The translations under genes and the position numbers were made by a program. 64,000 bases of DNA. It comes from Narcine bancroftii. Lineage: Eukaryota. The stretch spans positions 11,160,001-11,224,000 of the forward strand of contig NC_091481.1 of assembly GCF_036971445.1 (NCBI RefSeq). The letters are read 5' to 3'. The notes beneath the pieces were generated by a model, which saw only the letters and a program-made list of their open reading frames with translations, ran no database searches and was not told the origin of the DNA. Positions 23,201 to 59,580 of the stretch are shown piece after piece; within the stretch, counting starts at the first letter, position 1, and each line of letters begins with the position of its first letter.

Positions 23201-24284
23201 CTTTCCCTGATAGGCCAGTTAAGCTCTTTTGGTTGTGGTCAATTGGAGGGCAGCGCTGTGGCCTTCGTGCAGCCTGCTGGATCGTCGCATTCATCCTTCA
23301 TTTTGTGAGGCTCCTTCGGGGAGCTGCCAAAACTGTATATTTTAACCCATTATATTTTAATCCTGTCGTGGAATTTGCACGTTCACCTGGGCCGCTCTTC
23401 ACTGCACCTTCCAAACCCATGACCTCCACTCTCAAGGACAAGGGTAGTTGGAGCAGTGGACCACCACCACCACCTGTAGCTTCCCCTCCAAATTTAAAAT
23501 CTGATTTTAAAACAGACTGCCGGTCTAACATCCTGGAATTGGTTCCCCAAAAGCCTTCAACAGGGGGCTGCAGTTGTTCAAGAAGGCAGCCCACCACAAT
23601 CTTCTTGGGCTAATGAGGTGTGGGCAGTGAATGATTTCCTTATGATTGATGTGAAACAAAAAAGTCCGCAGACGCCGTGATTGTAGTAAAAGTGCACAGA
23701 AATGCTGGAGGAACTCAGCCTGTCTCACAGTGTCCACAGTGGGGTAAAGATATATTACCGACAGTTCGGGCTCCTCCCTGCCATTCTTCAGTCTTTATTC
23801 AGATGCCTTTCTGCTTTTTTTTTTTACCTTGAAGGGGTTAGACCCAAAAATATCTTTACCTCCTATGGAAGCTGCAAGACCGGCTGAGTTCCTCCTGCAT
23901 TTCTGTGTGGTTTTCCTTCCAATTGATGTTCAGATCCTAATAACTAAATAGTTATCAAAACAATTGAATAATTCTTTCTCCACATATGCTGCTTATCCTG
24001 TTGACCATTTCCAGATTAGGTTTTCAATTCAGATTTTCAACATTTGTAGTGGCATGCACCATATGTTACCATGGTGTAATCTGTTGTAAAAATTGGTGCG
24101 ATTATTTAAGTATGAAGAATGTCTATAATTTGTCTCATGACTTGCTGTACAGCAGAGACCTCTCCCAGATAGTCCAAGCATAAATGGCCTCACCAGTAGA
24201 GGAGAAAGTTTATGAAGATCAATTCCAGTTAGAAAATACATGGGTCCTTCTTCTGCTGCATGGAGGGCAAGGACTTCTAATCCC

Positions 24285-27200
24285 TCACTTTTTCAGTGTT
24301 TCACTCACTTGATCGATTGCTTCTTTGGTCCTGCTGAAACAAGAGATCAATAATGCAGCTCATAGACAGAGGGATAGCACAGTTTAAAACAAAACCCCTT
24401 GTAAGTAACACAATCTACAACAACGAAGAAGAATTAAGAACAAATATCTAACATACATTTTGATGCTTTCCTTCCAAGGCAGAGAAGTTCAAAGGATCAA
24501 GATGGGCTTCCCATTTGAACTATCATTTGATAGGATACTTTACTGGGTCAAGAAAAACTAGTCTGTTAACAGCTCAATACTTTCAGATTAAATTACAATA
24601 CAGTTGAACCCGTCATCCAGCATCAATGGGGATTGATAGATGCAAGATAAGGGAATTTTCTGGTTGGTTGAGGTTGGGCGTTGCGTGATTGACAAACTAA
24701 TGGCGAGGCACGCCAATTTTAAACCCACACTTTTTACCCATTTATTTTCTGCAGTTATTTTGCCAGTTGCTTGATGCTGCTGGTTTCTTGAATTTTGGAT
24801 ACTGTACTTTCCCAGAAGCACATTCCCCCTCCCAGTACTTTCCAAAAGTGATGACTGAAAATATTTTTTGATCATGTTGGGACAATGGCTGAAAACTACT
24901 CTCCTTCCCAAGATTCCCTGCTTCAAAGTCTGTATGATGCTGAATGAGACAAGAATGCTGGTTTCATCCAAGGATTAATCCAGGTCTGACAGAAGTTGCC
25001 GATGCTGTGACCCTGAATCATCTCATCCCAACCATGTTGAGGCTGATGGACATATGTATGGTGGAATTCTGCCCCATATCCCTGGGTAAATAGGACCAAA
25101 CAGTTTTAACTACATAACATTTCATCAATGAGACTGAATGGCAGAGAAACAGACCTTTTGGACCACCAAGTCCACTCAAGCCACTCGCCATTTAAAATTT
25201 TTGTCTCAGCCTTTTGAAACATCTTGTCAGCCATTCTCACAAAGGAATTATTTCCCTTTAGGAAGTATTGAAGCCTTACAGGTTTCCTGTGGTAGCAGAT
25301 TCAGTATTTTAACCCAGTGATTAAATACGAGAAGAAACTCCAGAGGGTTGTTAACTTGGCCTGCGACATTATGGGCACTAGACTTCACTCCATCGAGGAC
25401 ATCTACGAGAGGTGGTGTCTTAAGACAGCAGCCTCAATCCTCAAGAACCACAACCATCTAGTGTTCACTTTTTCTTTCCACTCACATACCACCTTAAGCA
25501 ATCCCTATACCATCGGTGCTCTGTGATTAGTTAAGGTGGTATGTGAGTGGGGTTAAAAAAAAAAGGTTGAGAACCACTGCTCTAGCCCCCAATTGTTACT
25601 GAAATATTTTGCTTGAGAAAAATTGTCATTGGCCATTTCCTTTTGAGTTATGAAACCATGCACATAACGAGTCAATTAGGTACGATTGAAACAGTGATTT
25701 TCAAACTTTTTCTTGCCGCTCACATACTACCTTAAGCAATCCCTTACTAATCACAGAGAACCGATGGCTTAGGGATTACTTAAAGCAGTATGTGAGTGGA
25801 AAGAAAAAGTTTGGAAACCACTGTTCTAACCAATTCCCCACCACCCCCCCCCACAAAAAATTCTCTTTATTCTCCACAAAATTTTCCAATCTGTAAAAAC
25901 ATCATGTCCAATATATTTATAAATTTTTAAGGAACACTTTATTTCACATCTTCTCTATTCTAAAAGAAAAAAAAACTTTCTCTCAGCTCCAGAACCATTC
26001 CTGAACAAATTCTCTTTCCTCACAGCCACCCAATCTAGTGCTTGTCTTCTACACGTTGAAAGAACATAAATTCACTACTTCAACACACCTGGAAGTAAAT
26101 CACACACAAAATTAGCATTTAATTATTCTGCTAATCCACAGTGCTATTTTTAATACATTTGTTCAGATGCATACCAAGGTACTTTTGTTCTTTTACACCA
26201 TACAATTTATTTTAAGTATGAGGTAATGTTTTAATTTTCCTCACCAAGATTCCTCTCATTTTTGGGTTAGACTTCATTTTCCAATTTAATGCTAAACAAC
26301 AAAAAACTGTTCATTAAACATTTGCTTAAAGTTAAAAGTCATACTTTTCACAGCATTTCTCCATCAGGGTTTCTGTCAAAAGGGATTAATTAATTGCAAC
26401 AATTAGTTATTCTCAGATATTCTTTGCTTTGATTGCTCAAGGATCATCTCGAAAACAGCATATAGTTCAGCCTTCAACACCATTATTCCCTCAGTCCTGG
26501 TCAACAAGCTTCAAACCCCGGGCCTCTGCACCCTCTTCTATAACTGGATCCTTGACTTCCTCATTGGAAGACCAGTCAGTTCAAATTGGAAATAACATCT
26601 CCTCCTCACTATCGATGAAGGCACACCTCATGGATGTGGGCTTAGCCCACTGCTCTACTCACTACACCCATGACTGTGTGGCCAGGCACAATTCCAATGC
26701 TATCTACAAATTTACCGATATCACCACAGTTGTCGGCAGAATCACAAATGGCAATGAAGAAGTGTACAGGAGGGAGATAGATCAGCTTGTTGAGTGGTGT
26801 CACACTGACAACCTTGCACTCAATGTTGGCAAACCAAGAAGGTGATTGTGGATTTCAGTAGGAAGTCAGAAGAACTCAAACCAGTCCAATTCAAGAGATC
26901 AGTAGTGGCAAGAGGCAAGAACTTCAAATTCTTGGGTGTCAACATCCCCAAGCATGCATCTTGGAGCCTCTATGTCGATGCAATCATGAAGAAGGCTCAT
27001 CAGTGGCTAAACTTTGTGAGCACTGTTCCCTCTAAGCTGTGCAACCAGCGCAAAAAGGAAATGATGTGCGCACAAAAGGTTAATTACCTAAAATAATATA
27101 GTAATAATTATCCTTTTTGAAAATCATCTCTTAGTAACTGTTTCTATTATCTAGTTAGTCGGTTAAACAAGTAGTTAATCATACATGTATGATATTAAAA

Positions 27201-30200
27201 CATGCCAATACAGTTTGATTAGCCATGAGAGAAAGGCCGTGCCAAAATGATCTTGAAACAATTTCAAGTTAACATTTGCACAAGCATTCAGTGCACACAG
27301 ACTTCTGTCACAGGAAAAAATTTGCACACATTTGTGCACTGACTACTAAAACTTCGAGGGAACATTGTTTGTGGGGCGTTTGAGGAGATTTGGTATGTCA
27401 CTTAAGACTCTCAAAAACTTTTAGAAGTGCACCATGGAGAGTTGGTAGAATCTCTGGTACGGAGATGCCAATGCGCAGGACAAGAAGAAACTCCAGAGGG
27501 TTGTTAACTTGGCCTGTGATATTATGGGCATCAGGCTTCACTCCCTCAAGGACATCTTAAAAAAGCAGTCTCTATCCTCAAGAACCACCACCATCTAGGC
27601 CATACCCTCTTCACTCTGCTTCCATCAGGAAGACAAACACTCAGCCATAAAAGGACAGCTTTTTTCATGCTGCCATCAGATTTTTGAATAATCAAAGACA
27701 ATGTTTAACTTTAATTTTTCGTGCAGTATTTTTTGTTTATTTTTGTAAGGTGGTTTATATGAATGTTTGTGCTGTGATGCTGCCACAAAAGAGTATTTGC
27801 TTATGACAATGAATTCTGATTCGAGAGAGAGAGAGATTTGCACATTACTGTACCGTGTTAATGGAACCTGCTCCACACACAAATTAACGAAAGGTCTCAG
27901 TTGGTGAAGGGCATATTCATACTGTAACAAAGAACAGAACATTATTCTCAGTACCCAGACTGATACAGACACAAACCTGAATTACTTAGAAGAATAAAGA
28001 TGCTTCAAATTTTTCTACTGGGATGATAATGGAGCAAGTTATTTAACTGTGTCCCCTAATTGTAATCTTATTCAATGTTCGGTGGCACGGTTTGTGCAAC
28101 GTTATTTTAGCGTCACTGACTAGGGCTTGAATCCGCTGGTCTGTATGGAGTTATACGACTTCGTGGATTTCCTCCAAGGGTTCTTGTTTCCTCCCATGTG
28201 TAGTTGGTATGTTAATTGGTCACGTGTGTAATTGGGCAGTATGGGCTCATGGGCCAGGAGGGCCTGTGACCGTATCTCCAAGTTATAATTACAAGGTACA
28301 GATGGGGAGGCACGGTCTCAAAGCTCCATTGATCCAGGTTCAGTCCTTACAGTGGCTGTTGTCAGTGTGGAGTTTGCACTTTCTCCCTACGACTGCAATG
28401 AGTTTTCTCCTCCCACATCCCAAGGTTATGTGGGTGGGTAAGTTAATTGGCCACTGCATGTTGGGTGAGTGACAGTTTTGGAAGAATTGATGATAAAGTG
28501 GAGAGAATAAAAAATGGGATTAATGTGTGCATGTTGGAAGTGGCTGGTTAGTGATCAATGCAGACTTAATGTGCTGGAGGATCTGCTTCTGCGGACACTC
28601 AGGGTGACTAGGAGAATATTCTGGTATTTCATGTTTTGCGTGCTCTCCCTGCATCAGATGAAGGACACACAAACTCCAAATGGACAACACTCAAGGTTCA
28701 GATTGAATCTGGGACACTGGAACTTTGGGACAGTATCTCGACTTGTTGCACCACTGTGTCATTCCTGTTAGCACTGGTTACTCATGTGGCCACTAATTTA
28801 AGTACCAAGGTACTAAATGCTGTCCTAAGGTGTTCTCTCTGTACTATGTACAGCAGCAGCATGTTACCATCTGGCCTCTGGCACTATTCATCCAGGATAT
28901 TACCCCTCAACTCAATTAAACAATCGGTCTCCTGGCTGGACTCAAGTCTTCCAGCTGCTATAACCTTGACCTCATCTAAAGCCATGGTAGCCAAGAACTG
29001 ACCCACAACACTATCACCTGTGCTCAACATCTTATCTTGCTTCCAATGATGTAAGCCCCTCCATGGCCCTCTCCCTGTGTGTAACCTCCTCTAGTCCTAT
29101 ATCCCTCTCTAACCCTGCAACTTCTTCGATCTCTCTCTGCTCCTCTAAATCTAGCAGCTTGTACATGTTTGACTTCTCCTGCACCATCATCTGTTGCCAC
29201 ACCTTCTACTGCCTCAGTCTCCAGCTCTGGAACTTGCTCCTGAACCTTTATATGCTTTTCCCTCTCCCTGCGCACCCCCAAACTCTATGCTAACTCTTTG
29301 ATCTCATTTTTAATTACTTGCCAAAATATCTACCTCTATGGCCCCAGGTTAATCCTCATTTGACAATGGTCCAAAGGACACATGGTGGGATCTTTCTCTG
29401 CACCAGGTAAATTGGACACAGGCATACCTCTGGCTTGTGCCAGTCGAAGCAATGGATTCGAAAATACTCCACTGCAGCACGGTAGTTTTCCCTGTTTGTA
29501 AGGTGCTGCTTGGTGGTGAGCACACGATTGGCCTGTTCCTTGGAGTCCGTGGCCAGAGTAACGATCCGTTCCACTGTCTGTTGGATCAGTTCTCTAACCT
29601 ATAACACAACAGATCTGATGGTTACTCTTGGACTCCCAAAAAGGAAAGACATCCAGCGAGAGGAAGGATATCACAAAGCTGGAAAGGGGTCAGAAAAGAT
29701 TCACAAGGATATTACTGGGCCGAGTGTTGGGGGTGGTGGGTGAGGAGCGGTGGCTTGCAATACAAGGAAGAACTGGAGAGTCTGGGATATTCTCCCTGGA
29801 GGACAGATTTCTGAGGGGTGACTTTTTGTAATCTAAATTAAATTTAGAAGTATGACAATTACAGGCCCTTCTGGCCCATGAGCCCACACTGCCCAAATAC
29901 CTCAATTAACCTACAACCCCTGTACATTTTTGAAGGGTGTGAGTGTCTGGAAGAAACCCACACAAACACGGGGAGAACGTACACACTCCTTACAGACAGT
30001 GCAGGGCTGAACCCCTGATGCTGGCGCTGTAACAGCATTCCACTAACCACTTCACTGACCGTGTCACCACTCATAATTTTGTAAATCTGCACCTGCGGCG
30101 GATCCACCCAGGCCCACTCCCAAGGCTTCAGTGTTGACCGCAGAGTCCCTCCTACTCATCTCAGCATAGCCCGACGTGGGCTACCCTCTTCCTGCCAATG

Positions 30201-33200
30201 ACTGCAGGTATGGGCCTGACACTCCACCCCAGCCCCATCCATTTTCAGAGCTAGTTGATCTCGGTATTACCTGTAGAAGCATGGAAGATAATGAGGTGAC
30301 AAAGTAACAGAGTCTAAAACTAAAGGCATAGATTTCAGGACAGAGGGAAAAGATTTAAAAGGGATAACCTTTTCCACACAGAGGATGGTGAGTTTATGCT
30401 AGAGGAAGAGATAGAGGCAGTTACCATAACAACATTTAAAATAGAGGTAGCGATGGAAAAGATTTAGACCAGTGGTTCTCAACCTTTCCACCCCCCCCCC
30501 CACCACTCCCCCTCACATACCATTTTAAGCAATCCCTTACTAACTACAGAGCACCTATGGCATAGGATGTAATAGGTGCTCTGTGGTTAGTAAGGGATTA
30601 CGAGGTGGTATGTGAGTGAAAACAAAAAGGTAGAGAACCACTGGTTTAGAGGGATATGGGTTAAATGCAGGTAAATGGGAATAGCTCAGGTAAACAACTT
30701 GGCTGGCATGGGCAAGTTGGGCCAAAGGGCCTGATTCCGCGCAGTATGACTGGCGAAACAATGAAGGATTCCCTGGAGCACGAGTTCCGCTGAACAGCAC
30801 CACTTCCATCAACCTGTGTGTGCGATGCCATCCATGGAAAGTGAGTGCAGCTGCCTGTCCCATCAGCCAACAGTCTTCTTTTTCAACCCTTTTATTAACA
30901 TTTCATAATATACACAGCATAAGGAGAATAGAAATAACACAATTAAAATGGTGCATCCAAGTCTACCCAGTATAAGTATCATATATAAATTCCAAAGAGT
31001 GAAAATGTGACATATTAGAAATAATTCTCCAAACAAAGAAAACAGAGATAAATAAATATTTCTTCTTTCTTTGGCTTGGCTTCGCGGACGAAGATTTATG
31101 GAGGGGGTAAAAAGTCCACGTCAGCTGCAGGCTCGTTTGTGGCTGACCAGTCCGATGCGGGACAGGCAGACACGATTGCAGCGGTTGCAAGGGAAAATTG
31201 GTTGGTTGGGGTTGGGTGTTGGGTTTTTCTAAAAAAGCCCCAACTAATCTACTAAAATCAAGAAAAGAAAACAAACAACTGAGTGGCCTCTCCCAAGGAT
31301 CTGTCGAATAGTTTCAAACAGAGCTCTGGTCCACAGCTACAGATAACAAAAATGGCAAGAATTATATGACATCTGGAAAGGAAGAATTAATTCATAGAAT
31401 AATGCCAGTTAAATCTCATGAAAGTCATCAATAAATGGTTTTCATGTTTCTTCAAATTTAGTCGTTGTACCTAAAGTTTGACTTCTGATTTTATTTCGAG
31501 CTTTAAGAAAAACATAACTCAAGAAAGCCATTGAAATAATGTCGGAGAATTAGTCTTTCCATTAAAGTAAAATGGCTCTTCCAGTTCTTCTTTGGCTTGG
31601 CTTCGCGGACGAAGATTTATGGAGGGGGTAAATGTCCACGTCAGCTGCAGGCTCGTTGGTGGCTGATAATTCCGATGCGGGACAGGCAGACACGGTTGCA
31701 GCGGAAAATTGGTTGGTTGGGGTTGGGTGTTGGGTTTTTCCTCCTTTGCCTTTTGTCAGTGAGGTGGGCTCTGCGGTCTTCCTCAAAGGAGGTTGCTGCC
31801 CCCCGAACTGTGAGGCACCAAGATGCACGGTTTGAGGCGATATCAGCCCACTGGCGGTGGTCAATGTGGCAGGCACCAAGAGATTTCTTTAGGCAGTCCT
31901 TGTACCTTTTCTTTGGTGCACCTCTGTCACGGTGGCCAGTGGAGAGCTCGCCATATAACACGATCTTGGGAAGGCGACGGTCCTCCATTCTGGAGACGTG
32001 ACCCACCCAGCGCAGCTGGATCTTCAGCAGCGTGGACTCGATGCTGTCGACCTCTGCCATCTTGAGTACTTCGACGTTAGGGATGAAAGCGCTCCAATGA
32101 ATGTTTTTTTTTTTTAATTTTTTTATTTTTCACACCATAAATCACATTAGCCATGATATACACTATTTCTTTTCACACATATACAGTGACTTTTTCTCCC
32201 CCCCCCCCTTTCCTCCCAAACCACCCCCCCACCCCCGCCTCTCATCCATTTTAGGTATACAATCTAGGTTGCATTAAGCCAGTCAGACAATGTTGTCATT
32301 CAACAAAATTACACCAGAAATTCTACTGAGTCCATTCTTTTCTTTCCTTCTCCTTCCATCAACTTAGGTAATGTTTGTCCCCGGTAGGTTTTCGCTATTG
32401 TATTTAATGTAAGGCTCCTATACTTGTTCGAATATTTCAATATTATTTCTTAACCAATATGTTATTTTTTCTAATGGAATACATTTATTCATTTAAATTT
32501 GGTAGTTTCTTCCTTTTAATTTGGTTATGTATTCCATTAATATTTAAAGACATATAGTTCAGCGTAGCCCTTTTATATTTTGTTTATCTTCTCTTTCCGT
32601 TTTTCCATCATTACCTTTCCTCCTTTTCCATTTCTGTTTTCTTATTTTCAACTCTTTATAAGACAACATTCCTACAACATCTAACATTTTCCTTATTCTC
32701 CTATTTCTATCTTATTTATCCCCAATCTCCCCTTCACCTCCTGAGTTGTCCTTTATCCCTTGTCGGACAACCACATCTCCCCTCTCCATTTGGATTTGCG
32801 AATCCACTCGCAAGCGTCAACTGATTGTGCAGTGACCGCTATTTCCCCCCACCCCGCCTCCCCCAGAAAAGATTTCACTTTTCATATGTCACAAAGGTCC
32901 CTCTTTTAATTCCCTCCTTATTCTCTCTATTCCATTACCTTCCCTTATTAATTCTTGTCTATACTATCTATATTTTCCTCTAAGTACAGATACATTCATG
33001 TATGCTCATTGTCTCTATTCACTCTTATACCTCTTTACCTGCATACATATCAATCGTGATCATTTTTACTCTCATTACCCGTCTTCATCCCTCAGTTTAT
33101 TTTTGTCTTTACCCACATACATATCAGTCGTGATCATTTTAACTCTCATTACCCGTCTTCCTCCCTCAGTCTATTTTTGTAATTGTTCTGCAAATTTTCG

Positions 33201-35934
33201 TGCTTCTTCTGGATCCGAGAATAGTCTGTTTTGTTGTCCTGGAATAAATATTTTCAATACCGCTGGATGCTTTAGTATAAATTTATACCCTTTCTTCCAT
33301 AAAATCGCCTTTGCTGTATTGAACTCTTTTCTCTTCTTTAGGAGTTCAAAACTTATATCTGGATAAATGAAGATTTTTTGCCCTTTATACTCCAGTGGTT
33401 TGTTGCCCTCTCTTACTTTTTCCACTGTCTTCTCCAGTACCTTTTCTCTTGTAGTATATCTTAGGAATTTTACTACAATAGATCTTGGTTTTTGTTGTGG
33501 TTGTGGTTTAGAGGCCAATACTCTATGTGCCCTTTCTATTTCCATTTCATGCTGTAGTTCTGGACATCCTAGGGTCTTAGGGATCCACTCTTTTATAAAC
33601 TCCCTCATATTCTTGCCTTCTTCATCTTCCTTAAGGCCCACTATCTTTATGTTATTTCTTCTGTTATGGTTTTCCATTGTATCTATTTTTTGAGCTAGTA
33701 GTTCTTGTGTCTCTTTAGTTTTTTTATTAGATTTCTCCAATTTCTTTTTTAAGTCTTCTACCTCCATTTCTGCTGCTACTGCCCGCTCTTCCATCTTGTC
33801 CATTTTTTTTCCCATTTCTGTTAAGGTCATCTCCATTTTAATTATCTTCTCCTCTGTGTTGTTTATTCTTTTTCTTAAATCCTTAAATTCCTGTGTTTGC
33901 CATTCTTTAAATGACTCCATGTATCCTTTAATAAGAGCAAGTATATCCTTTACCTTGCCTATCTTTTCTTCTTCTATTTCACCATACTCTTCCTCTTCCT
34001 CTTCTTCTTCCTCTGGGTTGACCATCTGTTGTTTCTTTGTTGCCCTTTCCTCCTCTTCTATCTTGTTTCTATTGTCTTCTGTGGTCTCTTCTTGCTGCAG
34101 GTGTTCTGCAGCTGTCGTTGCCGGCTGTGGAGATCGACTCCCCAGCTGGTCCCCCCTCCCGTCGGTGTGTTTTTTTTCATGCGCATGCGCGGTTGCGCAC
34201 TTTTGCTCGGCTCTGCGAGCCATTTTTGTAGTCCATTATTTACCGACCTGAGGGAGCGGGTTTCTCTCTCCGCAGCGGGCCTCTTCGGACAGGTAAGGCC
34301 TTCACCTTTTTCCTCCTTTGTCTTCTCTTCCTCTCTTCTTACCGTTGCTTTCGACTTTTCTTTTTTTGTCGCCATCTTCTTTCCACCTTTATACTCACTT
34401 TTCTGTAACTTTTATTTCTGTGCCTTTGTGTTTTCTCTTGTTTTTCCCGACTTTTCTGGAGAGGGCTGGAGTTCACCGTCCGGCCACTACTCCATCGCGT
34501 GACTCCTCGAGCCCAATGAATGTTGAGGATGGAGCGGAGACAACGCTGGTGGAAGCGTTCTAGGAGCCGTAGGTGATGCCGGTAGAGGACCCATGATTCA
34601 GAGCTGAACAGGAGTGTGGGTATGACAACGGCTCTGTATACGTTTATCTTTGTGAGGTTTTTCAGTTGGTTGTTTTTCCAGACTCTTTTGTGTAGTCTTC
34701 CAAAGGCGCTATTTGCCTTGGCGAGTCTGTTGTCTATCTCGTTGTCGATCCTTGCATCTGATGAAATGGTGCAGCCGAGATAGGTAAACTGGTTGACCGT
34801 TTTGAGTTTTGTGTGCCCGATGGAGATGTGGGGGGGCTGGTAGTCATGGTGGGGAGCTGGCTGATGGAGTACCTCCGTTTTCTTCAGGCTGACTTCCAGG
34901 CCAAACATTTTGGCAGTTTCCATAAAACAGGATGCCATGCGCTGGAGAGCTGGCTCTGAATGGGCAACTAAAGCGGCATCATCTGCAAAGAGTAGTTCAC
35001 GGACAAGTTGCTCTTGTGTCTTGGTGTGAGCTTGCAGGCGCCTCAGATTGAAGAGACTGCCATCCGTGCGGTACCGGATGTAAACAGCGTCTTCCTTGTT
35101 GAGGTCTTTCATGGCTTGGTTCAGCATCATGCTGAAGAAGATTGAAAAGAGGGTTGGTGCGAGAACACAGCCTTGCTTCACGCCATTGTTAATGGAGAAG
35201 GGTTCAGAGAGTTCATTGCTGTATCTGACGATTAACTGTATCTTCCAGTTAATCGTGTAGAAAAAGCAATAACTCGATATGCAAAAGTAGGTAAACAACC
35301 AAAATCTGTAATTCCAAAAAGAGCAGTTAAGGGTTAGGTTGTAATTGAATAACCAGTATAAGAATTTTAAAAATATCTTTCCAAAATTTTTCTAACACAG
35401 AACATGACCAAACATATGAGTCAATGAAAGTCACATCAGTATTGCATCTATCACAAGTAGAGCTCATATAAGGAAAGATGCAAGCTGATTTATCTTTAGA
35501 CATACAAGCTCTATGAACTATTTAAAACCGTATTAAAGAATGACATGCGCAAAGTGAAGAAGTATTAACTAATCTAGTAATTCTTCCCCATGTTTCAGGA
35601 GATAATGTCAATTCCAGTTCCCATGTTTGTCAAATCTTATCCATGAGAACTGATCTCAAATTTAATATAAAAGTATAAATAGTACCAATTAAACCCTTCT
35701 AAAACCCTCTATCTCTTAAATAGACATTACCGTAACCAACAGTCTCCTTGTCATAAGTGAGGAAGCTGTTGTGGAACTTCAGTTGGGGAAACAAGTCAGC
35801 ACTGTTACCTCAAGGAGGCGGTCCAGGTCTTTCTGAAGCTTTTCCCTTTCCTCTGGATCCTGAGTAGCTTTGATCCTCTTCTGAAGACAAGCAACAGGTA
35901 CATCACACTGTGCCACTGCCTCCATTCCTGCCAT
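24285..35934 (-). CDS. Stand-alone legumain pro-domain protein (activation-peptide end + LSAM), 136 aa: join(35934-35809,29598-29428,27921-27854,24330-24285)
   Basis: [136 protein letters not shown]. It aligns without gaps to the legumain C-terminus as recalled (DVP..., HCFNWH, YEYAL, VNLC). Introns are GT-AG with phases 0,0,2 and no stops. The start codon is inferred (ATG 35934 or 35925). Confidence 0.82.
24598..24805. mobile_element. Tc1/mariner (Tigger-like) MITE; related copy at ~44916-45143
   Basis: TA-CAGT...ACTG-TA ends and a shared internal block (GCCAATTTTAAAC..TTGCC/TTGCTGGTTGCTT..TTGAATT). Confidence 0.5.
26455..27820 (+). mobile_element. Rex1/Babar-like LINE interrupted by a hAT MITE (27021-27367)
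   Basis: [24 protein letters not shown]. The MITE has TIRs CACTGTTCCCTC/GAGGGAACATTG and 8-bp flanks tttgtgag/tttgtggg. Confidence 0.8.
28078..28600 (+). mobile_element. tRNA-derived (V-SINE/HE1-like) SINEs; others at ~29850-30065 (-), 38610-38830 (-), 40330-40610 and 43210-43290
   Basis: GGTGGCACGG..GGTTCAA/GAATCC heads and TGTGTGGAGTTTGCA..GGTTTCCTCC cores. Confidence 0.6.
31587..35240 (-). mobile_element. RTE-clade LINE (5'-truncated), split by an L1-derived insertion; a second short RTE 3' end lies at ~31062-31229
   Basis: [42 protein letters not shown]-terminal CxxC knuckle, (GAA)n tail. 10-bp TSD TCTTCCAGTT at 31577-31586 and 35241-35250, inside an older L1/Tx1 3' fragment (~30890-35760). 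Confidence 0.9.
32106..34512 (-). mobile_element. ORF1-only (HAL1-like) L1/Tx1 derivative with intact 350-aa ORF1 (33171-34223)
   Basis: L1 ORF1p motifs (coiled coil, [34 protein letters not shown]), poly(A) at ~32104-32130, 12-bp TSD CCAATGAATGTT at 32094-32105 and 34513-34524. Confidence 0.9.
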
Positions 35935-37199
35935 CCACTGCTGGATTTGCCTGTGTCTGCAGCAGGGACCAACGTAAGAAGACATACTTCAGACAATGAC
36001 AAATGTAAGCTCTCCTGAGGGAGAAGATCAGAGGGTCTGAGCAACAGGATAGGGATGGCCTACTATCAGGAAACGCAGAGTTCAAGATTAGAAAAGGAGT
36101 GGGAAATCTATAGCTGAGGGGCTTTTCCAGTTCGTCTGATGCATATGCTTTCATGACTCCAAGTACTGGACCATTTTGTGAAGTATTGTAATATTGGGAA
36201 CGTAGCAGTAAATTTGCTCACTGGACAATAATTTTTTTTCCAAAAGGTTTACCTCCTGAAAAAAAAATTAGGGATTATGATAGACAAATTCAAGATGAAC
36301 ACAAAGATAATTTCAGATTTGCTGTGTCACGTAGGAAGTTGGAGAAACGTTAATTTAACTTTTATTGAATTTAGCATATTTAATTGCATTATGATGCCGA
36401 CACATTACGTTAGTTCAAATGACCTAAAAATGTTTTGCCGCTAATATTTATTTGTACTCAGCATCTGATCCCTCTCATGTCAGTGTCCAACAATAGTCAG
36501 CCAGCACTGGTACCAGTTGCCCTGGTACCACTTTTTCATGTTGTCAAGGTCCTGATGAAACCTTTCACCATGTTCGTCACTTACTGCACCAAGATCAGCA
36601 GGGAAGATGTCCCAGCGCGAATGCAGAAAATGAATTTTTAATGACATGTTGCACTTCATGGTTTGTATGCTTGAAGCATGTTAAAAATGACATAAAATCA
36701 CAAAAGCAGGTTATATTTTAAAAAAATGGTATGTGATAGGAAAATGTTAAGGTGATTTTTGTGATCAGCCAAAAATCCATAAATACACCCAAAAGTGTTC
36801 AGGAGGCAAAATCTTCATAGTCCAGGGTATTCACTCAGTATAACAATGTGCAGAAGATGAACATAATGCTTGACATTCATCTGCAAAGATCTGATCTGTA
36901 TGGATCACGTTCACAACATACAAGAAGGAGATGGGCATGACCAACTCCAACAAGAGTTTAACCATCTCCTCTTAAAATTCAACAGCATTATTATCATCTA
37001 CACTGGAGACACTGGATACAGACTGGGAGATCGCTTTGTTGAGCTCCTCAGCTCTGTCCACCATAATCACATGGATCTCCCAGTGGCCAACCATTTCAAT
37101 TCCCCATCCCATTCCTCGGCTGATAGTCCATGGTCTCATGCACTGTTGGACAGAGAACCAGCCGTTCACAATGTTCATCGCCACCACACAGAAGGTGAC

Positions 37200-37900
37200 C
37201 ATGACAGAAAGCCCACGGGCAAAGGACGTCGGAACACAGAGGGGTTTCCAAAATGATCACGCGGATGCAAACTCGCTCCGTGACTCCACCGCCCGCCCCG
37301 CCGGAATCTGCCAGCGTGGCTCCACTCTCCTTCTCCTGTCCATCCCAGCGGGCTCCCTTCCCCAATCCCCCGAATGGTCCCGAAGAACCCACTTTCCACG
37401 CCATTAACTTAATAGGGGGGGGGGGGGGGGAAATGAAACTCACCGCGGCTCCGCGCACACCCCGCCCTTCCTGGATCCAGAGACGACCTGCCCGCATCAC
37501 ATCTCCCTTTTTCCGGGTTCGGCCACAGCCGTCAATCAACCGGTTCGGCCAATGCCGTCAACCGGCCCCGGGTTCGCGCAGTCTGGATTCAACCCACCTC
37601 CTTGATGGTGAGCAACGCGTCCTGTGTCCCCCTGCTGGATTTGGCTGGGGGGGGGGGGTTCACTCCATATTCAAAGCCGGGAACGTTCAGCGGCGAAGAG
37701 AAGGAGGCAGGTCTGCAGACACCGCGGTGGGACGATACACCACGCTGCAGAAACCCAGCCGAGATAAAGAGGCACAGCCGGCGTTTCGCCCTTCAGCCCG
37801 TCATCAGCTCTCTCCTTGCCAGTTCTGAGGCCGCTGACAGACCTTTGTTGTTGCCTCTTGCCTCGCCCGGAGGAGCCTTCTCTCCAGGGCCACGCACCCC
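37200..37900 (-). promoter_or_regulatory. CpG island with a candidate non-coding first exon of the legumain-pro-domain gene (donor CCGCG|gtgagt at 37444/37443)
   Basis: Dense CpG, GC boxes (~37290, ~37461), CCAAT (~37549) and a consensus donor about 1.5 kb upstream of the acceptor at 35956/35950. Confidence 0.55.
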
Positions 37901-39059
37901 ATTTGGAGGGGGACTGAAATCATCGTTCTTTGAATGTTTCTTGTTCATGTGGTGGGTGGAAGAGACCAACTCCCGGCTGCTTCACCAGCAAGGGAGTCCA
38001 GAAACTGCGTGGAGCCCAAAGCCACACTAAAAAGGTCGAGAATGGCTTGTCTGCACGACTCTTCCTTTCTATGATCATTATCTTGGTCTTTGGTGCATTC
38101 GGAGATGTTCCCAAAACTCGGGTTTTCTTGGAATGTGCTTTCTTTGCCAAGCCTTTGCTGTTATGTACGTTTTTCTCCTTGAAGAGATTGTTATCCCCTA
38201 TAAACGACATGTAAATTCTTTTCACGTTAGGCATTGCTTGTTTACCGTCAATCTTTTTCATGTTGTTCTCCAGGTGAACCCATTCCTTGTGGGATTCTGT
38301 TTCATTTATATTAATTTTAAGCTTTAAATAAAGTTAGATCTTTTCGAGCAGAGATTGAAAGGTTTTTGATAAGCCAGGGCTTCAAAGGTCACAGGGAGAA
38401 GGCTGGGCGGTGTGGATCAGCTCATGATTGAACGGTGGGACAGACTCGATGGGCTGAATGGCCTATTTCTGCTCCTTTGATCATTCTTCTCTATTGGCCC
38501 CTTAAAGAGTGGATTATTATTCTTCCTCATTACAGTGTACCAAATCTAAAATTGGGCAGCGCCTGTAAATTTAAATCAATTTTTAAAAATGAGCTTGTTC
38601 CCTGTTTTTAAATTTAGACATACAGTACAGTAAAAGGCCATTTCAGCCCAATTTACACCCCATTAACCTACACCCTGGTATGTTTTGAATGGTGGGAGGA
38701 AACCAGAGTGCCCCCCCCCCCCCCACCGGGAGAAAACACACATAGAGTCAGGGAGAAAGTACAGACAGCACGGCATTCGATCCCCAATCCAGTAGCGATC
38801 ACTGGCACTGAAAAGGCGTGGCACTAACCACCTCAACAAACAGATCCAGAAAACCATTTCTAGTACCCCTCACAAATTTATCCTCCCTTGTATTTTTGCT
38901 AATTTTTATCAAGATCTTGGGTTTTAAAAATGCATGGCTATTTTGGAGATGTGTAAGAGACTGGAAATGCTGGTATCTCGAGCAACATGCATTTTACTGG
39001 AGGACCTCAGTAAGATAAGCAGCATCAGTGGGAGAAAAATAATAATCATTATATTCAGA

Positions 39060-43425: not shown

Positions 43426-43798
43426 TCACACAGGAAGTAGTGTAGGGGAATGGAGCTTCACCCAACTCTTATGGCTTGGAATATCAATCATCATGTCTTT
43501 GTTTTTTGGAATCAGTTGGAGAATATTTGCTTTGAGATTTCCAACCCTAACTCTCATTCCCAGGTTGGGGATGCAGCTCTCATCTCCCAGGTCTTTTAGA
43601 ATGGTATTCATAATTTTCTGAAGAAATTCTTTGTCATATTTCTGCCTGAAAGACAACAGCTCTTTCACCTGTGTTTCAACTCTGAGTAAAAGTTCTTCAT
43701 CGTCTGTGATTTTAATGATGATCTTCAGATCAGTACGGATTTCTTCAACTTGTTGAATGTTTCTTTGTCCAAGGTCACCAAGTTCATTTGCACACAAA
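43426..43798 (-). CDS. Terminal exon of the NLR: last LRR plus about 90 aa predicted helical tail
   Basis: Acceptor tgtttacag; TA|T completes Tyr to give [15 protein letters not shown] (LRR), then [17 protein letters not shown]...SPTLLPV*. Confidence 0.75.
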
Positions 43799-46700
43799 CT
43801 GTAAACATCAAAGCAATGATCTTCAGCAAATGCGTCATGCATATATAGCCCCCAAAAATTATTTTCTGACCACCAAATTCTCTTTATGGCCCACGCCTAA
43901 AATTCTAAAGGGAGATCATGGTCACTGCTCATGCAGATGTTTGGAAAAATTTCTAACTGCTCACTCTTGTTGCTCTCTCCTGTGCATGCACATGTAGATA
44001 TTTTATGTTCAAGTACAATTTTTTTTAAAACTGTTATCCGGAATTCAAGCAACTGGAAAAAATCATTGCGGAAAATAGGTAAAAAATACGCAAGTTTAAA
44101 ATTGACGCACCTCACCATTGGTTCACCAGTGACGAACACACATTCTCAAGCAACCGAAAAATTCACTTATCCAGCATCTACCGATCCCCAGAGGCGGCAG
44201 ACACTAGGGGTTTTACTATATTTATGACTCCCTTTTGAAAATAAATTTGGAATCCACAGCATGTTCAATATAAATTTCCCTAATTTCCTTCCATTTTTTG
44301 TAAACCATCTGAAATCTGTACTCTCTGAATACCAACCTTCCTGCCAATAGAAACAATTTTGTCCTTTATGCTCAACCAATTACCAAACCAGAGGAGAGCA
44401 GTCTAAAAGGGTCCTGTCCCACAGATCTGCTATTTCCCTCCTTGGATGCTGCCCGACCCAATGAGTTCCTCCAAATGCTCATTTTATTGTTCCAATTTCC
44501 AAACCTCCATCCATTTTCATTATATTAAATCAAGAATATACCCAATTCCTTTAAAATGCATCAAGAGGCTTTGATAGATAAGTGGTTAGAGCACTGGCAT
44601 TTTTAAACCAGGGGTTGTGAGTTCATTCCTTGCTGGGGCCTCATTTCTGTGAGGGGTGCTTGACAAAGTGGCAACTCTCTGTCTTCCTTACAGTAGACAA
44701 AGTTAAAGTATTTCATGTAGTATTAGGTGACAATAATGGAACCTTTATCTTGTCAGCCACTAATAGTGACACTGAATCAGCTCAACAAGAATACTTTCTC
44801 AATTCTTGCTCCTTTCTGCTCCTCACAGTGAAAGCACAGAACACTTATGGACTGGTCTGTAATACCATTTGTTCTTTGCATTTTATGACTGGGAAAGGAG
44901 AAGAGAGTCACGTTTGCAGTGAAACCCCCTGTATTTGGCACCTATGGGAATTGGTAGATGCCCGATAAGTGAATTTGCTGGTTGCTTGAGATTGCATGTT
45001 GCGTGGATTTGCAAACTAATTGCTGGGGGCGCCAATTTTAAACGTTTATATTTTTTACCAACGGGTATTTATTTTCCGTGATATTTTTGCTGGTTGCTCG
45101 AGGCTGCCAGTTACTTGAATTCCAGATAATGGGGATTTTACTGGATTGTGTCTCAGACTCAGTAAAGTCAATCATTTGTACACAAATACATCATTGAAGG
45201 GATGTTTCAAACAAACTGCATATGCATAGGTCCATCCAGTTACTTACTAGAGTTTCTGGAGAGTTTTGTTGCAAGTCAGGTACCGATTCATATTTTTTGT
45301 GCCTTCATCCATGATTTTATTGTCATATAAACGAAGGACTTTGAGACTTTGGTTATTCGCCAGAGCTTCCCAAAAATACTGAGCTCCTGTGGAACCAAAA
45401 GAGTTTGTTCCACACCTGAAAAGCAGAATCAAATGTCAAATGTCAGGGATTAGATTTCCTATTGAAATTTGAACAGTTTTATACGAAGATGTATGTGATA
45501 AAAATTCTCACGATAATGTCTCAATCCTGCATTCTGGGTTTTGAAGGATATTACTCAAAATCTTTGCTGAGTCCTCTGTCAGTTTGTTGGAGCTTACCCT
45601 AGAACACAAGACAATGAGAAGAATTAGAGTTGAGTATCTGCGTGGAGAAGAACTCCAGTCTCACAAACTGCTGATGGAGGGGACTGCCTTAAAAGTAAAC
45701 ACTGGTTCTTCCAGGAGAGCAAGGTTTCTAACCCCTGTCTAACAAGGAACATTTCTATATTATTTATGATTTTTATGAAGAGAGGGCACCTGAGGTTGAT
45801 GTGAAACCACCTTCAAATGGTTCCACTCTGTTACTGCAACGTGGAACACACAAAATCAATTTGAATTCAACAATTGCTTACAATATGTAAAAGTGATCCA
45901 TTAAGATGCAGGGAAATTGTGACATGCACTTGAACAAAGGTAAAACGATGGCAGAACTCCAATTGTTCTTCTTTTAGATATTTATTCTGTGGGTTCTGCC
46001 TTTCCCTGCCCTCTTACAAAGAGGAATATGGAAAAGAATAATTCAGATCAAATAGTACTTTCCATGTATTCATATTTCCCAACTAATGGTTACTTTTGTG
46101 GTGTTTGAAGGTAATCCCACAGTCAATGAGCACAGCAAGTGGCCATTGGGACTTGATTTGATTTGGGAAGAAAAAAATGAGACTACCCATTGTCTCTGTT
46201 GTGCTTGAAATGAGGTGGTGCAAGATTTACAAATAGACTGTACCTGCTACCTGCGCTTGCAGCAAGCAAAGTATCTTTACAGCGATAAATAAAAATCTCT
46301 ACAAGCAACAGCAAATAGAATCAATCCCCTTCACACACAGCATGGTTATGCCACCAAGAATGGACAAGGATAGGCACATGAGAGAACAGAGTAACAGATG
46401 CAGTTAATTGCACAAATAATTTCCAAAGAGCCTTGAAAAGTAGCATTGTGATGTGCAGATGCCGACATTAGTCAAGACAGAAAAGAATCAGGAAAGGTAG
46501 GACAAAAAAATGTCAAAATGTAGAATAAATCACAAAGGAGAACAAACATAGGGTATATAAATGACTGAAACTAAAGCTTAATATTTTAATGAAAATCATT
46601 ACTCACAAAAGAGTTCTGCATTTGAATAGTACATCTTTGAGCTGTTTTATTCCTTCATCTCTGAGCCTGCAGAGTCTCAAATCCAACACTTCCACTGTGG

Positions 46701-58636: not shown

Positions 58637-59350
58637 GGCCCTAATAAGCAAAAATTAAACAAGTGGCATCTTTGAGCATCTTCCCTGCTCCCTTCTCCCC
58701 CCACCCAGCCACTGCTCTCCCCACCAATCTTCTCCCCGCTCTCCCCTGCCACCACTTTCTCCCACATCGACCCCCACCTCCCTCCTCCACCATCCCTCTC
58801 CTCCACCATCCCTCTCCCCCACCACCCACTCTCCCACCACCCTCCCCTCCACTCCGCCACCTTCTGGAGTGCAGTGGAGGTGTAGGAAGTGAAACAAAGA
58901 ACAATCAGCTTCTAGCAACAATGATTTCTGCACAAACTCACGATTTATTTTTTGTCATATTCTTCCAATCCCACTCTTTTGTCTGGACACTGGATTGCAA
59001 CTCGATCAAACAGTTCCATCTCAGCACTTTTAAATGGGTTTCTTGTTCTTGACAAGAAACTGCAAAGGGAAACAAGCTCAGGTTTGCCAGGTGACCTTGT
59101 ACATGTACAGGGCATGCCCTGTACTTAATGGTTTTGACTTTATCAGGATGCCTTAAATGTCCTGAATTAAGATTTTACACCCCACCCTCTCCTCTCTCCC
59201 CACCACCCCACCCTCTCCTCTCTCCCCACCACCCCACCCCCTCCTCTCTCCCCACCCTCCCCACCACCCCACCCCCCACTCTCCCCACCCCCCACTCTCC
59301 CCACCACCCTACCCTCTCTCCTCTCTCTCTCTCCCCCCCCCCCCAACACC
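57960..59350. repeat. C-rich low-complexity tracts (57960-58350, 58680-58860, 59180-59350)
   Basis: CCCACCCC/CCTTCCCTCC repeats; source of spurious Pro/Gly ORFs. Confidence 0.8.
58576..58636 (-). CDS. Leader (signal-peptide-like) exon of the Ig-TM-NLR gene: [20 protein letters not shown](G)
   Basis: Acceptor ttattag at 58641-2, Kozak GGCC-ATG-G, phase-1 donor G|gtgagt. It joins to (G)ASSFSIS of the IgV exon. The hydrophobic core is short, so signal function is only moderately supported. Confidence 0.62.
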
Positions 59351-59580
59351 CCACTCTTTCACCTTCTTCCGGAATGCACCAGAGATCTGGGGAGTGCAAC
59401 AAAGAACCGTCATGTCATATCGACGACGATTTCTGCACAAACTCACGGTTTATTTGAGTTCACAAGAATGATCTTCTCCCCTTCTTTTGTCTGGACACCG
59501 GACGGCAGCTGGATCGGGCTGTTCCCCCTCAGCCCTTGTCACCGAGTTGTTGACAAGAAACTGCGAAAGTGAAAGCAGAT
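58860..59580 (-). promoter_or_regulatory. Tandemly duplicated candidate promoter / non-coding exon 1 of the Ig-TM-NLR gene with IRF-type motifs
   Basis: 58860-59075 and 59365-59577 are diverged copies. Each has a gtgagttt donor (exon ends 58942 and 59447) and an upstream GAAA-repeat element: GAAAGTGAAAG at 59565-59575 and AAAGGGAAAC near 59064-59073. GGAAGTGAAAC at 58885-58895. Confidence 0.55.

What the first reader, a model, noticed from the sequence alone, without database searches (positions are those of the whole stretch)
24285..37500. A gene encoding only the legumain pro-domain (activation-peptide end + LSAM)
Seen: four exons, the last three matching the recalled terminal LGMN exons in phase and the two internal ones in length (171, 68 nt), with an intact frame across heavily transposon-invaded introns. 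The first exon begins just before the DVP helix. No catalytic-domain exon (HQAD, DHG, EACESG) is visible upstream within the window; a CpG island with a consensus donor sits there instead. Established: this region keeps prolegumain inactive, and LSAM has a death-domain-like fold. Inference: a partial duplicate retained as a stand-alone 136-aa protein, either a trans-acting legumain inhibitor/stabiliser or a death-fold-like adaptor.
Basis: partly seen in the sequence, partly recalled or inferred. Interest (0 to 1): 0.82.

Follow-up and report, generated by a model that had tools for sequence, protein, structure and literature searches.

The report
Stand-alone legumain prodomain gene, ancient
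This electric-ray gene is real and transcribed, encodes only the "lid" (prodomain) of the lysosomal protease legumain with no protease part, and belongs to an unstudied family shared by sharks, rays and many bony fishes that databases already list as "legumain-like".

Summary
Minus-strand exons at 35956-35809, 29598-29428, 27921-27854 and 24330/24333-24285 encode the legumain activation-peptide helix plus the LSAM domain. Their translation is identical to RefSeq "legumain-like isoform X2" of Narcine bancroftii (136 aa).

RNA contigs from four runs show the predicted 37444->35956 splice. The 5' exon is non-coding, lies in a CpG island, and carries an in-frame stop, so no catalytic domain can be fused upstream. 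No catalytic-domain exon occurs anywhere in the 64 kb.

The gene is not a recent remnant. About 133-146-aa orthologues occur in 15 or more elasmobranchs and in gar, sturgeon, tarpon, bonefish, milkfish, catfishes, characins and a sucker. They form one clade (100/100 support) that mirrors the species tree. In five bony-fish species the gene coexists with a full legumain on another chromosome-scale contig.

The family lacks a signal peptide, has lost one cysteine of each of the two LSAM disulfides, has lost the Asn autocleavage site, and has lost the net positive charge. It has gained conserved motifs of its own. It keeps the prolegumain prodomain fold (TM 0.78).

It is most likely an intracellular, neofunctionalised LSAM-fold binding protein. 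A role as a legumain inhibitor is possible but untested. I found no paper describing the family.

The parts
37001..38000 (.). CpG island around the first exon (promoter region)
   Evidence: GC 0.58-0.63 and CpG o/e 0.67-0.82, against a window mean of 0.33
37444..38350 (-). Exon 1, non-coding. Its 3' end is the donor at 37444 (GCG|GTGAGT). The TSS was not determined. It contains uATGs at 37502 and 37497.
   Evidence: Joint 35956/37444 with GT..AG on the minus strand, in contigs of X1 and X4. The frame that continues into exon 2 has a stop 18 codons before the donor. RefSeq isoform X3 starts at the 37497 ATG.
35957..36254 (-). Alternative 5' extension of exon 2, using the acceptor T9CAG| at 36254. 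It adds uORFs and an in-frame ATG at 35985.
   Evidence: Joint 36254/37443 in X3 and a colinear contig 35807-36318 in X2. Sequence and ORFs.
35809..35956 (-). Start codons at 35934 and 35925. It encodes [42 protein letters not shown], which is the activation-peptide helix and the start of LSAM.
   Evidence: A contig loose end at 35807 reads the start of exon 3.
29428..29598 (-). Exon 3, 171 nt, the LSAM core (...[21 protein letters not shown])
   Evidence: PDB prolegumain E 6e-8; Pfam Legum_prodom; identical to P0062
27854..27921 (-). Exon 4, 68 nt ([22 protein letters not shown] + 2 nt)
24285..24333 (-). Coding part of exon 5. The NAGNAG acceptor (24333 or 24330) gives 137- or 136-aa isoforms. 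Stop TGA at 24287-24285.
   Evidence: isoforms X1 and X2
23775..24284 (-). Probable 3' UTR up to the first AATAAA at 23799. The end was not determined.
   Evidence: Poly(A) signal scan. RNA runs hold 0.79-0.97 of the sampled words of 23700-24400.

Best explanation
SHOWN. This is the Narcine bancroftii copy of an old, vertically inherited gene family, named 'legumain-like' by automatic annotation. It encodes only the C-terminal prodomain of legumain: the activation-peptide helix that begins at the DVP motif, plus the LSAM domain. It is transcribed from its own CpG-island exon and spliced 37444->35956. It is translated from an ATG in exon 2 into a 136/137-aa all-helical protein. INFERRED. The gene arose before cartilaginous and bony fishes split, by a DNA-level duplication that kept introns, either a partial 3' copy of LGMN or a whole-genome-duplication copy that later lost its catalytic exons. 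After a burst of change it has been kept under purifying selection. It has no signal peptide, cannot form either LSAM disulfide, has lost the Asn cleavage site, has lost canonical-invariant basic residues, and has gained invariant positions and motifs of its own (TDSxEQA, RIKxAIDxVS). I therefore take it to be an intracellular (cytosolic or nuclear) protein-protein interaction module that no longer works as the lysosomal zymogen lid. Its partner is unknown. The gene's reality, architecture, age and conservation carry about 0.9 confidence. 'Intracellular' carries about 0.7. 'Partner is not legumain' carries only about 0.5.
For: The exons are identical to RefSeq XP_069765721.1, and all three RefSeq isoforms are short at 113-137 aa. 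Spliced RNA contigs appear in 4 runs, with the joint 37444->35956 and a loose end reading exon 3. An in-frame stop lies upstream of the splice. No catalytic exon was found in 64 kb. A profile search found 133-146-aa orthologues in 15 or more elasmobranchs and many actinopterygians. The short clade is monophyletic at 100/100, with a stem of 1.11 substitutions per site and an internal topology that follows the species tree. Ray-shark identity has a median of 76%. A full LGMN sits on a different chromosome-scale contig in Megalops cyprinoides, Albula goreensis, Chanos chanos, Acnodon oligacanthus and Lepisosteus oculatus. The AF2 model has pLDDT 83 and matches the prolegumain prodomain at TMq 0.78, rmsd 2.1 A, and Z 11.2. 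Of the four canonical Cys columns (18/18 Cys in canonical sequences), two have 0/27 Cys in the short family, and the Asn323 column has 0/27 Asn. Median pI is 6.0 against 8.4 for canonical prodomains. N-terminal hydrophobicity is 0.5-1.6, against 2.2-3.5 for legumain signal peptides.
Against: Localisation and partner are inferred from sequence only. The activation-peptide helix (DVPxxILQKxI) stays strongly conserved, which would fit a retained contact with the legumain active-site region. Two elopomorph gene models carry a hydrophobic N-terminal extension that could be a signal peptide. No canonical elasmobranch legumain was in the tree, and where the short clade attaches among canonical sequences is unresolved (AU p 0.089). 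The tissues of the RNA runs are unknown.
Confidence: 0.8

Rival explanations
1. It is a trans-acting legumain regulator. The free prodomain docks on mature legumain that is outside lysosomes (cytosol or nucleus) and blocks or stabilises it. It resists cleavage because the Asn site is gone. This would be a C13 counterpart of the cathepsin-propeptide-like inhibitors of MEROPS family I29.
For: It retains the whole prodomain fold, including the activation-peptide helix that lies over the active site in the zymogen. The Asn323 column is replaced by a conserved Lys (21/27) rather than drifting freely. There is precedent in CTLA-2alpha, crammer and BCPI (PMC4089206). Legumain is reported in the cytosol and nucleus (abstract of PMC9579014). 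At neutral pH, LSAM shelters and stabilises the catalytic domain (PMC9788469).
Against: The published binding mode is electrostatic: a positive LSAM on an acidic catalytic surface (PMC9788469). The short family has lost the net positive charge (median net -2 against +2). It has also lost canonical-invariant basic residues (K->Q, K->Q/E, R->H). There is no signal peptide, so it is normally in a different compartment from legumain. The long stem branch and new family-specific invariant motifs point to a changed function.
Confidence: 0.3
2. It is a death-fold-like adaptor in innate immune signalling, for example serving the effector-less IgV-TM-NACHT-LRR gene that lies directly upstream on the same strand.
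For: LSAM is described as having a death-domain-like topology (PMC7489914, PMC12320161). The NLR's last ORF ends at 43426, about 5 kb upstream of the 5'-most extent of the gene's RNA contigs (~38463), on the same strand.
Against: No death-domain, CARD, PYD or DED chain appeared among Foldseek hits with E<1 or in the top 50 rows of the wide structural search. Whether the adjacency is conserved in other species could not be checked. The RNA contigs give no joint to NLR exons within the stretch laid.
Confidence: 0.07
3. It is the ordinary 3' end of a full legumain gene with a very long intron, or a decaying, unexpressed partial pseudogene, or a misassembly.
For: None survives testing. The only initial basis was that exon 2 has an open frame upstream of its ATG.
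Against: The splice partner of 35956 is 37444, preceded by colinear non-coding sequence with an in-frame stop. All RefSeq isoforms are short. Intact orthologues of the same length occur across species whose last common ancestor predates the shark-ray and cartilaginous-bony fish splits. The RNA contigs match the window with no differences over the exons.
Confidence: 0.02

Closest known systems
C-terminal prodomain (activation peptide + LSAM) of prolegumain / asparaginyl endopeptidase, e.g. PDB 4FGU, 4NOK
   Same: It is homologous in sequence: exon B scores E 6e-8 and identity is 36-39% over 121 aligned positions. It has the same fold (TMq 0.78, rmsd 2.1 A). Shared core motifs are DVP, CF(N/D)WH, YEYAL, NLC and R-I-x-x-x-x-D-x-V.
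   Different: It is not attached to a C13 catalytic domain and has no signal peptide. Two of the four disulfide cysteines are absent in every member. The Asn autocleavage site is replaced (Lys in most members, Gln in Narcine). Net charge is acidic or neutral rather than basic. It has its own invariant motifs.
Propeptide-like cysteine-protease inhibitors, MEROPS I29 (mouse CTLA-2alpha, Drosophila crammer, Bombyx BCPI; PMC4089206)
   Same: The logic is the same: a separate gene encodes only the prodomain of a lysosomal cysteine protease.
   Different: The fold and parent enzyme are unrelated, since I29 derives from the N-terminal propeptide of papain-like C1 cathepsins. I29 members are proven inhibitors. 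Inhibition by this protein is untested and the sequence features make it uncertain.
Automatic database entries 'legumain-like' and 'Legumain prodomain domain-containing protein' (e.g. XP_069765720-22 Narcine bancroftii, XP_015211451 Lepisosteus oculatus, XP_017554109 Pygocentrus nattereri)
   Same: They are the same gene family. XP_069765721.1 is the very product of this locus.
   Different: These are names from annotation pipelines only. Four full-text searches found no paper that describes the family.

Membership tests
Legumain prodomain (Pfam PF20985 Legum_prodom; AP + LSAM) | Sequence match to the family model | tested here: met
   The whole protein P0062 carries a precomputed PF20985.3 assignment. 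Exon B alone gives E 0.024 to PF20985, below the cut-off as expected for a fragment, and E 6e-8 to PDB prolegumains.
Legumain prodomain (Pfam PF20985 Legum_prodom; AP + LSAM) | Helical prodomain fold as in solved prolegumains | tested here: met
   The AF2 model (pLDDT 83) matches 4nok and 4fgu at TMq 0.77-0.79 and rmsd 2.0-2.2 A over 121 columns. VIA gives Z 11.2 to 5h0i.
Legumain prodomain (Pfam PF20985 Legum_prodom; AP + LSAM) | Two conserved disulfide bonds in LSAM (PMC12320161, PMC7489914) | tested here: not met
   The four Cys columns are 18/18 Cys in canonical sequences. In the short family two of them hold 0/27 Cys, and the other two hold 24/27 and 18/27.
Legumain prodomain (Pfam PF20985 Legum_prodom; AP + LSAM) | Asn autocleavage site between AP and LSAM (human N323; PMC9788469) | tested here: not met
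   The column is Asn in 18/18 canonical sequences. In the short family it is Lys 21, Thr 2, Gln 1 (Narcine) and Asn 0 of 27.
Peptidase family C13 (legumain, the enzyme) | Caspase-like catalytic domain with the His/Cys dyad (Pfam PF01650) | tested here: not met
   tblastn with P0005, P0022 and P0044, which cover the catalytic domain, found nothing in the window. The transcript's 5' exon is non-coding with an in-frame stop. The RefSeq isoforms are 113-137 aa.
MEROPS I29 propeptide-like inhibitors | Homology to the cathepsin L propeptide | tested here: not met
   A Pfam scan of the exons returns only Legum_prodom plus noise, with no I29 hit. Structure search returns only legumains.
MEROPS I29 propeptide-like inhibitors | Inhibits the cognate protease in trans | not testable with these tools
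   This needs recombinant protein and an enzyme assay.
Death-fold superfamily (DD/DED/CARD/PYD) | Six-helix death-fold detectable by structure comparison | tested here: inconclusive
   No death-fold chain appeared among Foldseek hits with E<1 or in the top 50 of the wide VIA search, where the long N-terminal helix dominates the rows. The literature calls LSAM death-domain-like (PMC7489914).

The most novel reading that the evidence does not exclude
Cartilaginous and many ray-finned fishes keep a gene, older than the cartilaginous-bony fish split, for a free and cleavage-resistant legumain 'lid'. This protein would act in the cytosol or nucleus as an endogenous guard or modulator of extralysosomal legumain. 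It would be the first protease-derived, prodomain-type inhibitor known for clan CD/C13, and it was not found in tetrapods in this search (absence not established).
Probability: 0.25. Interest if true: 0.75.

Novelty: new variant of a known kind. Interest (0 to 1): 0.55.

Why it matters
Legumain's LSAM domain is released on activation. Whether it has a life of its own is an open question, and a 2025 protocol paper (PMC12320161) was written to enable exactly such studies. Here nature has run the experiment. A prodomain-only gene has been kept, expressed and constrained since before sharks and bony fishes diverged, with the hallmarks of a move out of the secretory pathway. That offers a natural handle on prodomain functions that do not depend on the enzyme. 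If it still binds legumain, it would be a new class of endogenous C13 regulator. The practical caveat is that the gene is already in RefSeq and UniProt under automatic names. The novelty is therefore recognising and characterising the family, not finding the locus.

Tried and rejected
I could therefore get no genomic loci of orthologues or of canonical LGMN. That ruled out a synteny test, a direct comparison of exon lengths and phases with LGMN, and dN/dS.
- The third protein search listed only the best 120 of 2273 hits. All were bony fishes or lamprey, so no canonical elasmobranch legumain entered the tree. I could not show directly that Narcine has a separate full LGMN.
- The protein-atlas search gave no usable hit.
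- The PNAS 2013 prolegumain structure paper is not held. A residue-level list of interface contacts was therefore not available, and I could not test conservation of the interface. The disulfide pairing (1-3 and 2-4) comes from my memory only.
- The search of earlier findings had no other legumain note in this genome.
- The idea that the Gln at the Asn323 column is a conserved active-site plug is rejected as a family feature. Gln occurs in 1 of 27 members, namely Narcine, and the family consensus is Lys.
- Placement of the short clade next to the canonical Polypterus sequence is not trusted. An AU test does not reject a tree with all canonical bony-fish prodomains held as one clade (p 0.089).
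- Two Logan/ENA proteins, P0025 and P0032, looked human (identical to my memory of the human LGMN prodomain). After one search printed them I did not align, search or use them further.
Wherever a whole protein was needed I used the database protein P0062, which one search returned and which equals the exon translations.
Full report
WHAT IS IN THE SEQUENCE.
- Exon A is 35956-35809, 148 nt. It enters in phase 1 and has in-frame ATGs at 35934 and 35925.
- Exon B is 29598-29428, 171 nt.
- Exon C is 27921-27854, 68 nt.
- Exon D starts at a NAGNAG acceptor (24333 or 24330) and runs to the stop at 24287-24285.

Exon B alone matches the prodomain of solved hamster, human and mouse prolegumains at E 6e-8 to 2e-7. 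It also gives a weak hit to Pfam Legum_prodom, as expected for a 57-aa fragment. The window has no N. A CpG island sits at about 37001-38000, with GC 0.58-0.63 and CpG o/e 0.67-0.82 against 0.33 for the window. It contains the donor GCG|GTGAGT that ends at 37444.

NO CATALYTIC DOMAIN. I ran tblastn with partial canonical legumains that together cover the catalytic domain (P0005, P0022, P0044). They hit only exons B and C; exon A was hit only by P0004 (a canonical C-terminal fragment, E 0.6) and the short-family queries, and exon D only by the short-family protein P0020 (E 0.16). Everything else was noise at E above 0.2. In the frame that continues into exon A, the sequence upstream of the 37444 donor has a stop 18 codons before the splice, with no ATG after it.

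TRANSCRIPTION AND SPLICING. Four public runs from one study hold 79-97% of the sampled words of the 3' exon region. When laid on 35650-38350, they proved to be RNA because their contigs are spliced.
- In X1 and X4, one contig (1435 and 1377 nt) joins 37444 to 35956. The ends are CT..AC on the plus strand, which is GT..AG on the minus strand.
- That contig continues colinear upstream to 38350 and about 113 nt beyond.
- Downstream, its loose end at 35807 reads the first bases of exon B.
- In X3, the donor is joined instead to a strong alternative acceptor at 36254 (T9CAG|).
- In X2, a contig is colinear from 35807 to 36318.
- The exons showed no sequence differences from the window.

Misassembly and lack of expression are excluded. 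The TSS was not determined. The contig depths suggest that most transcripts in X2 and X3 do not include the distal part of the 1-kb upstream stretch.

IDENTITY. A phmmer scan of 1.84 billion representatives with exon B gave surprising hits. Besides exon-sized fragments of canonical legumains, it returned short proteins that begin just before the DVP motif. A profile of these plus the ray exons (A1) then retrieved a whole family.

P0062, 'legumain-like isoform X2 [Narcine bancroftii]', XP_069765721.1, 136 aa, is identical to the translations of exons A (from MAGM), B, C and D (second acceptor). The genome is therefore the lesser electric ray, and the locus is already a RefSeq model on a 94.9-Mb chromosome. 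Its other isoforms are also short.
- X1 is 137 aa and uses the first NAGNAG acceptor.
- X3 is 113 aa. It starts at ATG 37497 in exon 1 and is spliced directly to exon B, giving LSAM without the activation-peptide helix.

Where a whole protein was needed I used P0062 as returned by the search.

A FAMILY, NOT A LOCAL REMNANT. Orthologues of 133-146 aa are annotated in the following taxa.
- Elasmobranchs: Pristis, Rhinoraja, Mobula, Hemitrygon, Hypanus, Heterodontus, Mustelus, Cetorhinus, Heptranchias, Rhincodon, Pristiophorus, Chiloscyllium, Hemiscyllium, Stegostoma and Scyliorhinus.
- Actinopterygians: gars, sturgeon, Megalops, Albula, Chanos, a catostomid, many catfishes and characiforms.

All start a few residues before DVP and end with RIKxAIDxVSxxLKK.

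I built a tree of 27 short proteins and 18 canonical prodomains. The short proteins form one clade at 100/100 support on a long stem (1.11 substitutions per site). Inside it, a chondrichthyan group (83/82, not starred) is set against a starred actinopterygian clade (99/98), and the order sturgeon/gar, elopomorphs, otocephalans follows the species tree. That means a single origin before the cartilaginous-bony fish split, followed by vertical descent. Where the clade attaches among canonical sequences is unresolved. The free tree puts it beside Polypterus, but holding all canonical bony-fish prodomains as one clade is not rejected (AU p 0.089). No canonical elasmobranch sequence was available.

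The short gene and a full-length legumain coexist on different chromosome-scale contigs in Megalops cyprinoides, Albula goreensis, Chanos chanos, Acnodon oligacanthus and Lepisosteus oculatus (contig lengths).

The ray gene keeps introns. Several exon-sized fragments of canonical legumains break at the same places: after ...WHxPx and after ...NLCExxxPxxR (P0034, P0004, P0005). This fits a DNA-level duplication rather than a retrocopy.

CONSTRAINT. Ray-shark identity has a median of 76% (range 68-83). Elasmobranch versus bony fish is 45%. Over the same species pairs the short protein is somewhat less conserved than the canonical prodomain: 54-66% against 71-82% among teleosts, and 68% against 70% for gar-sturgeon. 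Intact frames of nearly constant length across these depths exclude neutrality. dN/dS could not be computed because no orthologous DNA was obtainable.

WHAT CHANGED. I compared the families column by column.
- The four cysteines are invariant in 18/18 canonical prodomains. LSAM has two disulfides (PMC12320161, PMC7489914).
- In the short family two of those columns never hold Cys: one is N/E/M and the other S/G/N. The other two hold Cys in 24/27 and 18/27 members.
- By the 1-3 and 2-4 pairing that I recall, neither disulfide can form.
- The autocleavage Asn (human N323, PMC9788469) is present in 18/18 canonical sequences and 0/27 short ones. It is Lys in 21 and Gln only in Narcine. The 'Gln plug' noted elsewhere in this scan is therefore a ray peculiarity, not a family trait.
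- Canonical-invariant basic residues are replaced (KRK -> Q-K/N-R/K, K -> Q/E, R -> H).
- The median pI falls from 8.4 to 6.0. The literature ascribes LSAM binding to a positive LSAM on an acidic catalytic surface (PMC9788469).
- New invariant or near-invariant positions appear: V7, the T59-D-S61-x-E63-Q-A loop, E86, K124 and I127.
- The N-termini have no signal-peptide-like hydrophobic stretch: the maximum 9-residue Kyte-Doolittle value is 0.5-1.6, against 2.2-3.5 for legumain signal peptides. The exceptions are two elopomorph gene models with an unverified extension.

FOLD. AlphaFold2 on P0062, using the 34-sequence family alignment, gives pLDDT 83 and pTM 0.75. The model has seven helices and a disordered first nine residues. 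Foldseek finds only legumain proenzymes, mammalian at E 8e-7 to 8e-5 with TMq 0.64-0.79 and rmsd 1.8-3.0 A (0.77-0.79, 2.0-2.2 A for 4nok/4nom/4fgu), then plant ones. A Foldseek-independent scan of 48,161 chains gives one clear match, a plant proenzyme at Z 11.2, and nothing else above Z 5. No death-fold protein surfaced. This does not contradict the published 'death-domain-like topology', but it adds nothing in favour of an adaptor role.

INTERPRETATION. Four things are shown. The gene is real, expressed and conserved, and it encodes only the prodomain. It has its own promoter exon. It is old. Its sequence has shifted away from the features that serve the zymogen.

From these I infer the following. 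The origin was a partial duplication, or a whole-genome-duplication copy that lost its 5' exons. The protein is intracellular. Its function is protein-protein binding through the LSAM fold.

I put about 0.3 on a retained, trans-acting relation to legumain, meaning a cleavage-resistant lid for enzyme outside lysosomes, analogous in logic to the I29 propeptide-like inhibitors (PMC4089206). I put about 0.5 on a new partner. I put less than 0.1 on a link to the neighbouring effector-less NLR.

KNOWN OR NEW. The locus and family are in RefSeq and UniProt under automatic names. Four full-text searches found no paper that recognises or studies a prodomain-only legumain paralogue. I rate it a new variant of a known kind: a known domain as a free-standing, constrained gene.

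LIMITS AND COMPLIANCE.
- Read laying was given 2701 letters.
- No N stretch was present or filled.
- The two human-looking proteins P0025 and P0032 were left aside once recognised.
- The spliced product was never typed or joined by me.

Noticed in passing
window 36287-36830 and 37015-37105: Repeat copies inside intron 1, including a transposase-like ORF at 36480-36659 on the minus strand, have summed RNA-contig depths of thousands to tens of thousands in all four runs. That is far above the host gene's exons, so this transposon family is highly transcribed.
   Followed up: no
window 37497-37444 joined to 35956-35903: Exon 1 carries ATG-TGA at 37502 and then an ATG at 37497. In the main isoform the second opens a 35-codon uORF that ends at 35903, past the main start at 35934. 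In RefSeq isoform X3 the same ATG is joined in frame to exon B with exon A skipped, giving a 113-aa LSAM-only protein without the activation-peptide helix.
   Followed up: partly
window 24330-24335: A NAGNAG tandem acceptor (cagcag) at the last exon yields the 137-aa (X1, ...LTRRTKEA...) and 136-aa (X2, ...LTRTKEA...) isoforms.
   Followed up: yes
window 35862-35860 and 24329-24327: Narcine alone departs from two near-invariant family positions. It has Gln instead of Lys at the column of the canonical autocleavage Asn, and Thr instead of Ile in the C-terminal R-I-K motif.
   Followed up: partly
window 43426-59580, minus strand: The upstream neighbour on the same strand is an IgV-TM-NACHT-LRR gene. 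Its ORFs are at 56439-56780 (IgV), 46603-48291 (NACHT) and a last ORF ending at 43426. Other notes of this scan treat it. The region laid showed no splice link to the legumain-like gene.
   Followed up: no
window 5501-5899, minus strand: An ORF with a tetraspanin-like C-terminal segment (...[28 protein letters not shown]...) is probably an exon of a downstream neighbour gene.
   Followed up: no
window 33171-35298 (minus) and 50734-51720 (minus): Long retroelement ORFs are present. A LINE-type ORF1 and reverse transcriptase lie in the intron between exons A and B. An LTR-type reverse transcriptase lies inside the NLR gene region, which is GC-rich at 0.58 over 50-52 kb.
   Followed up: no
proteins P0065 (Megalops) and P0020 (Albula): The elopomorph gene models of the short family carry a hydrophobic N-terminal extension (Kyte-Doolittle 2.6-3.5). 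This could be a lineage-specific signal peptide or a misprediction.
   Followed up: no
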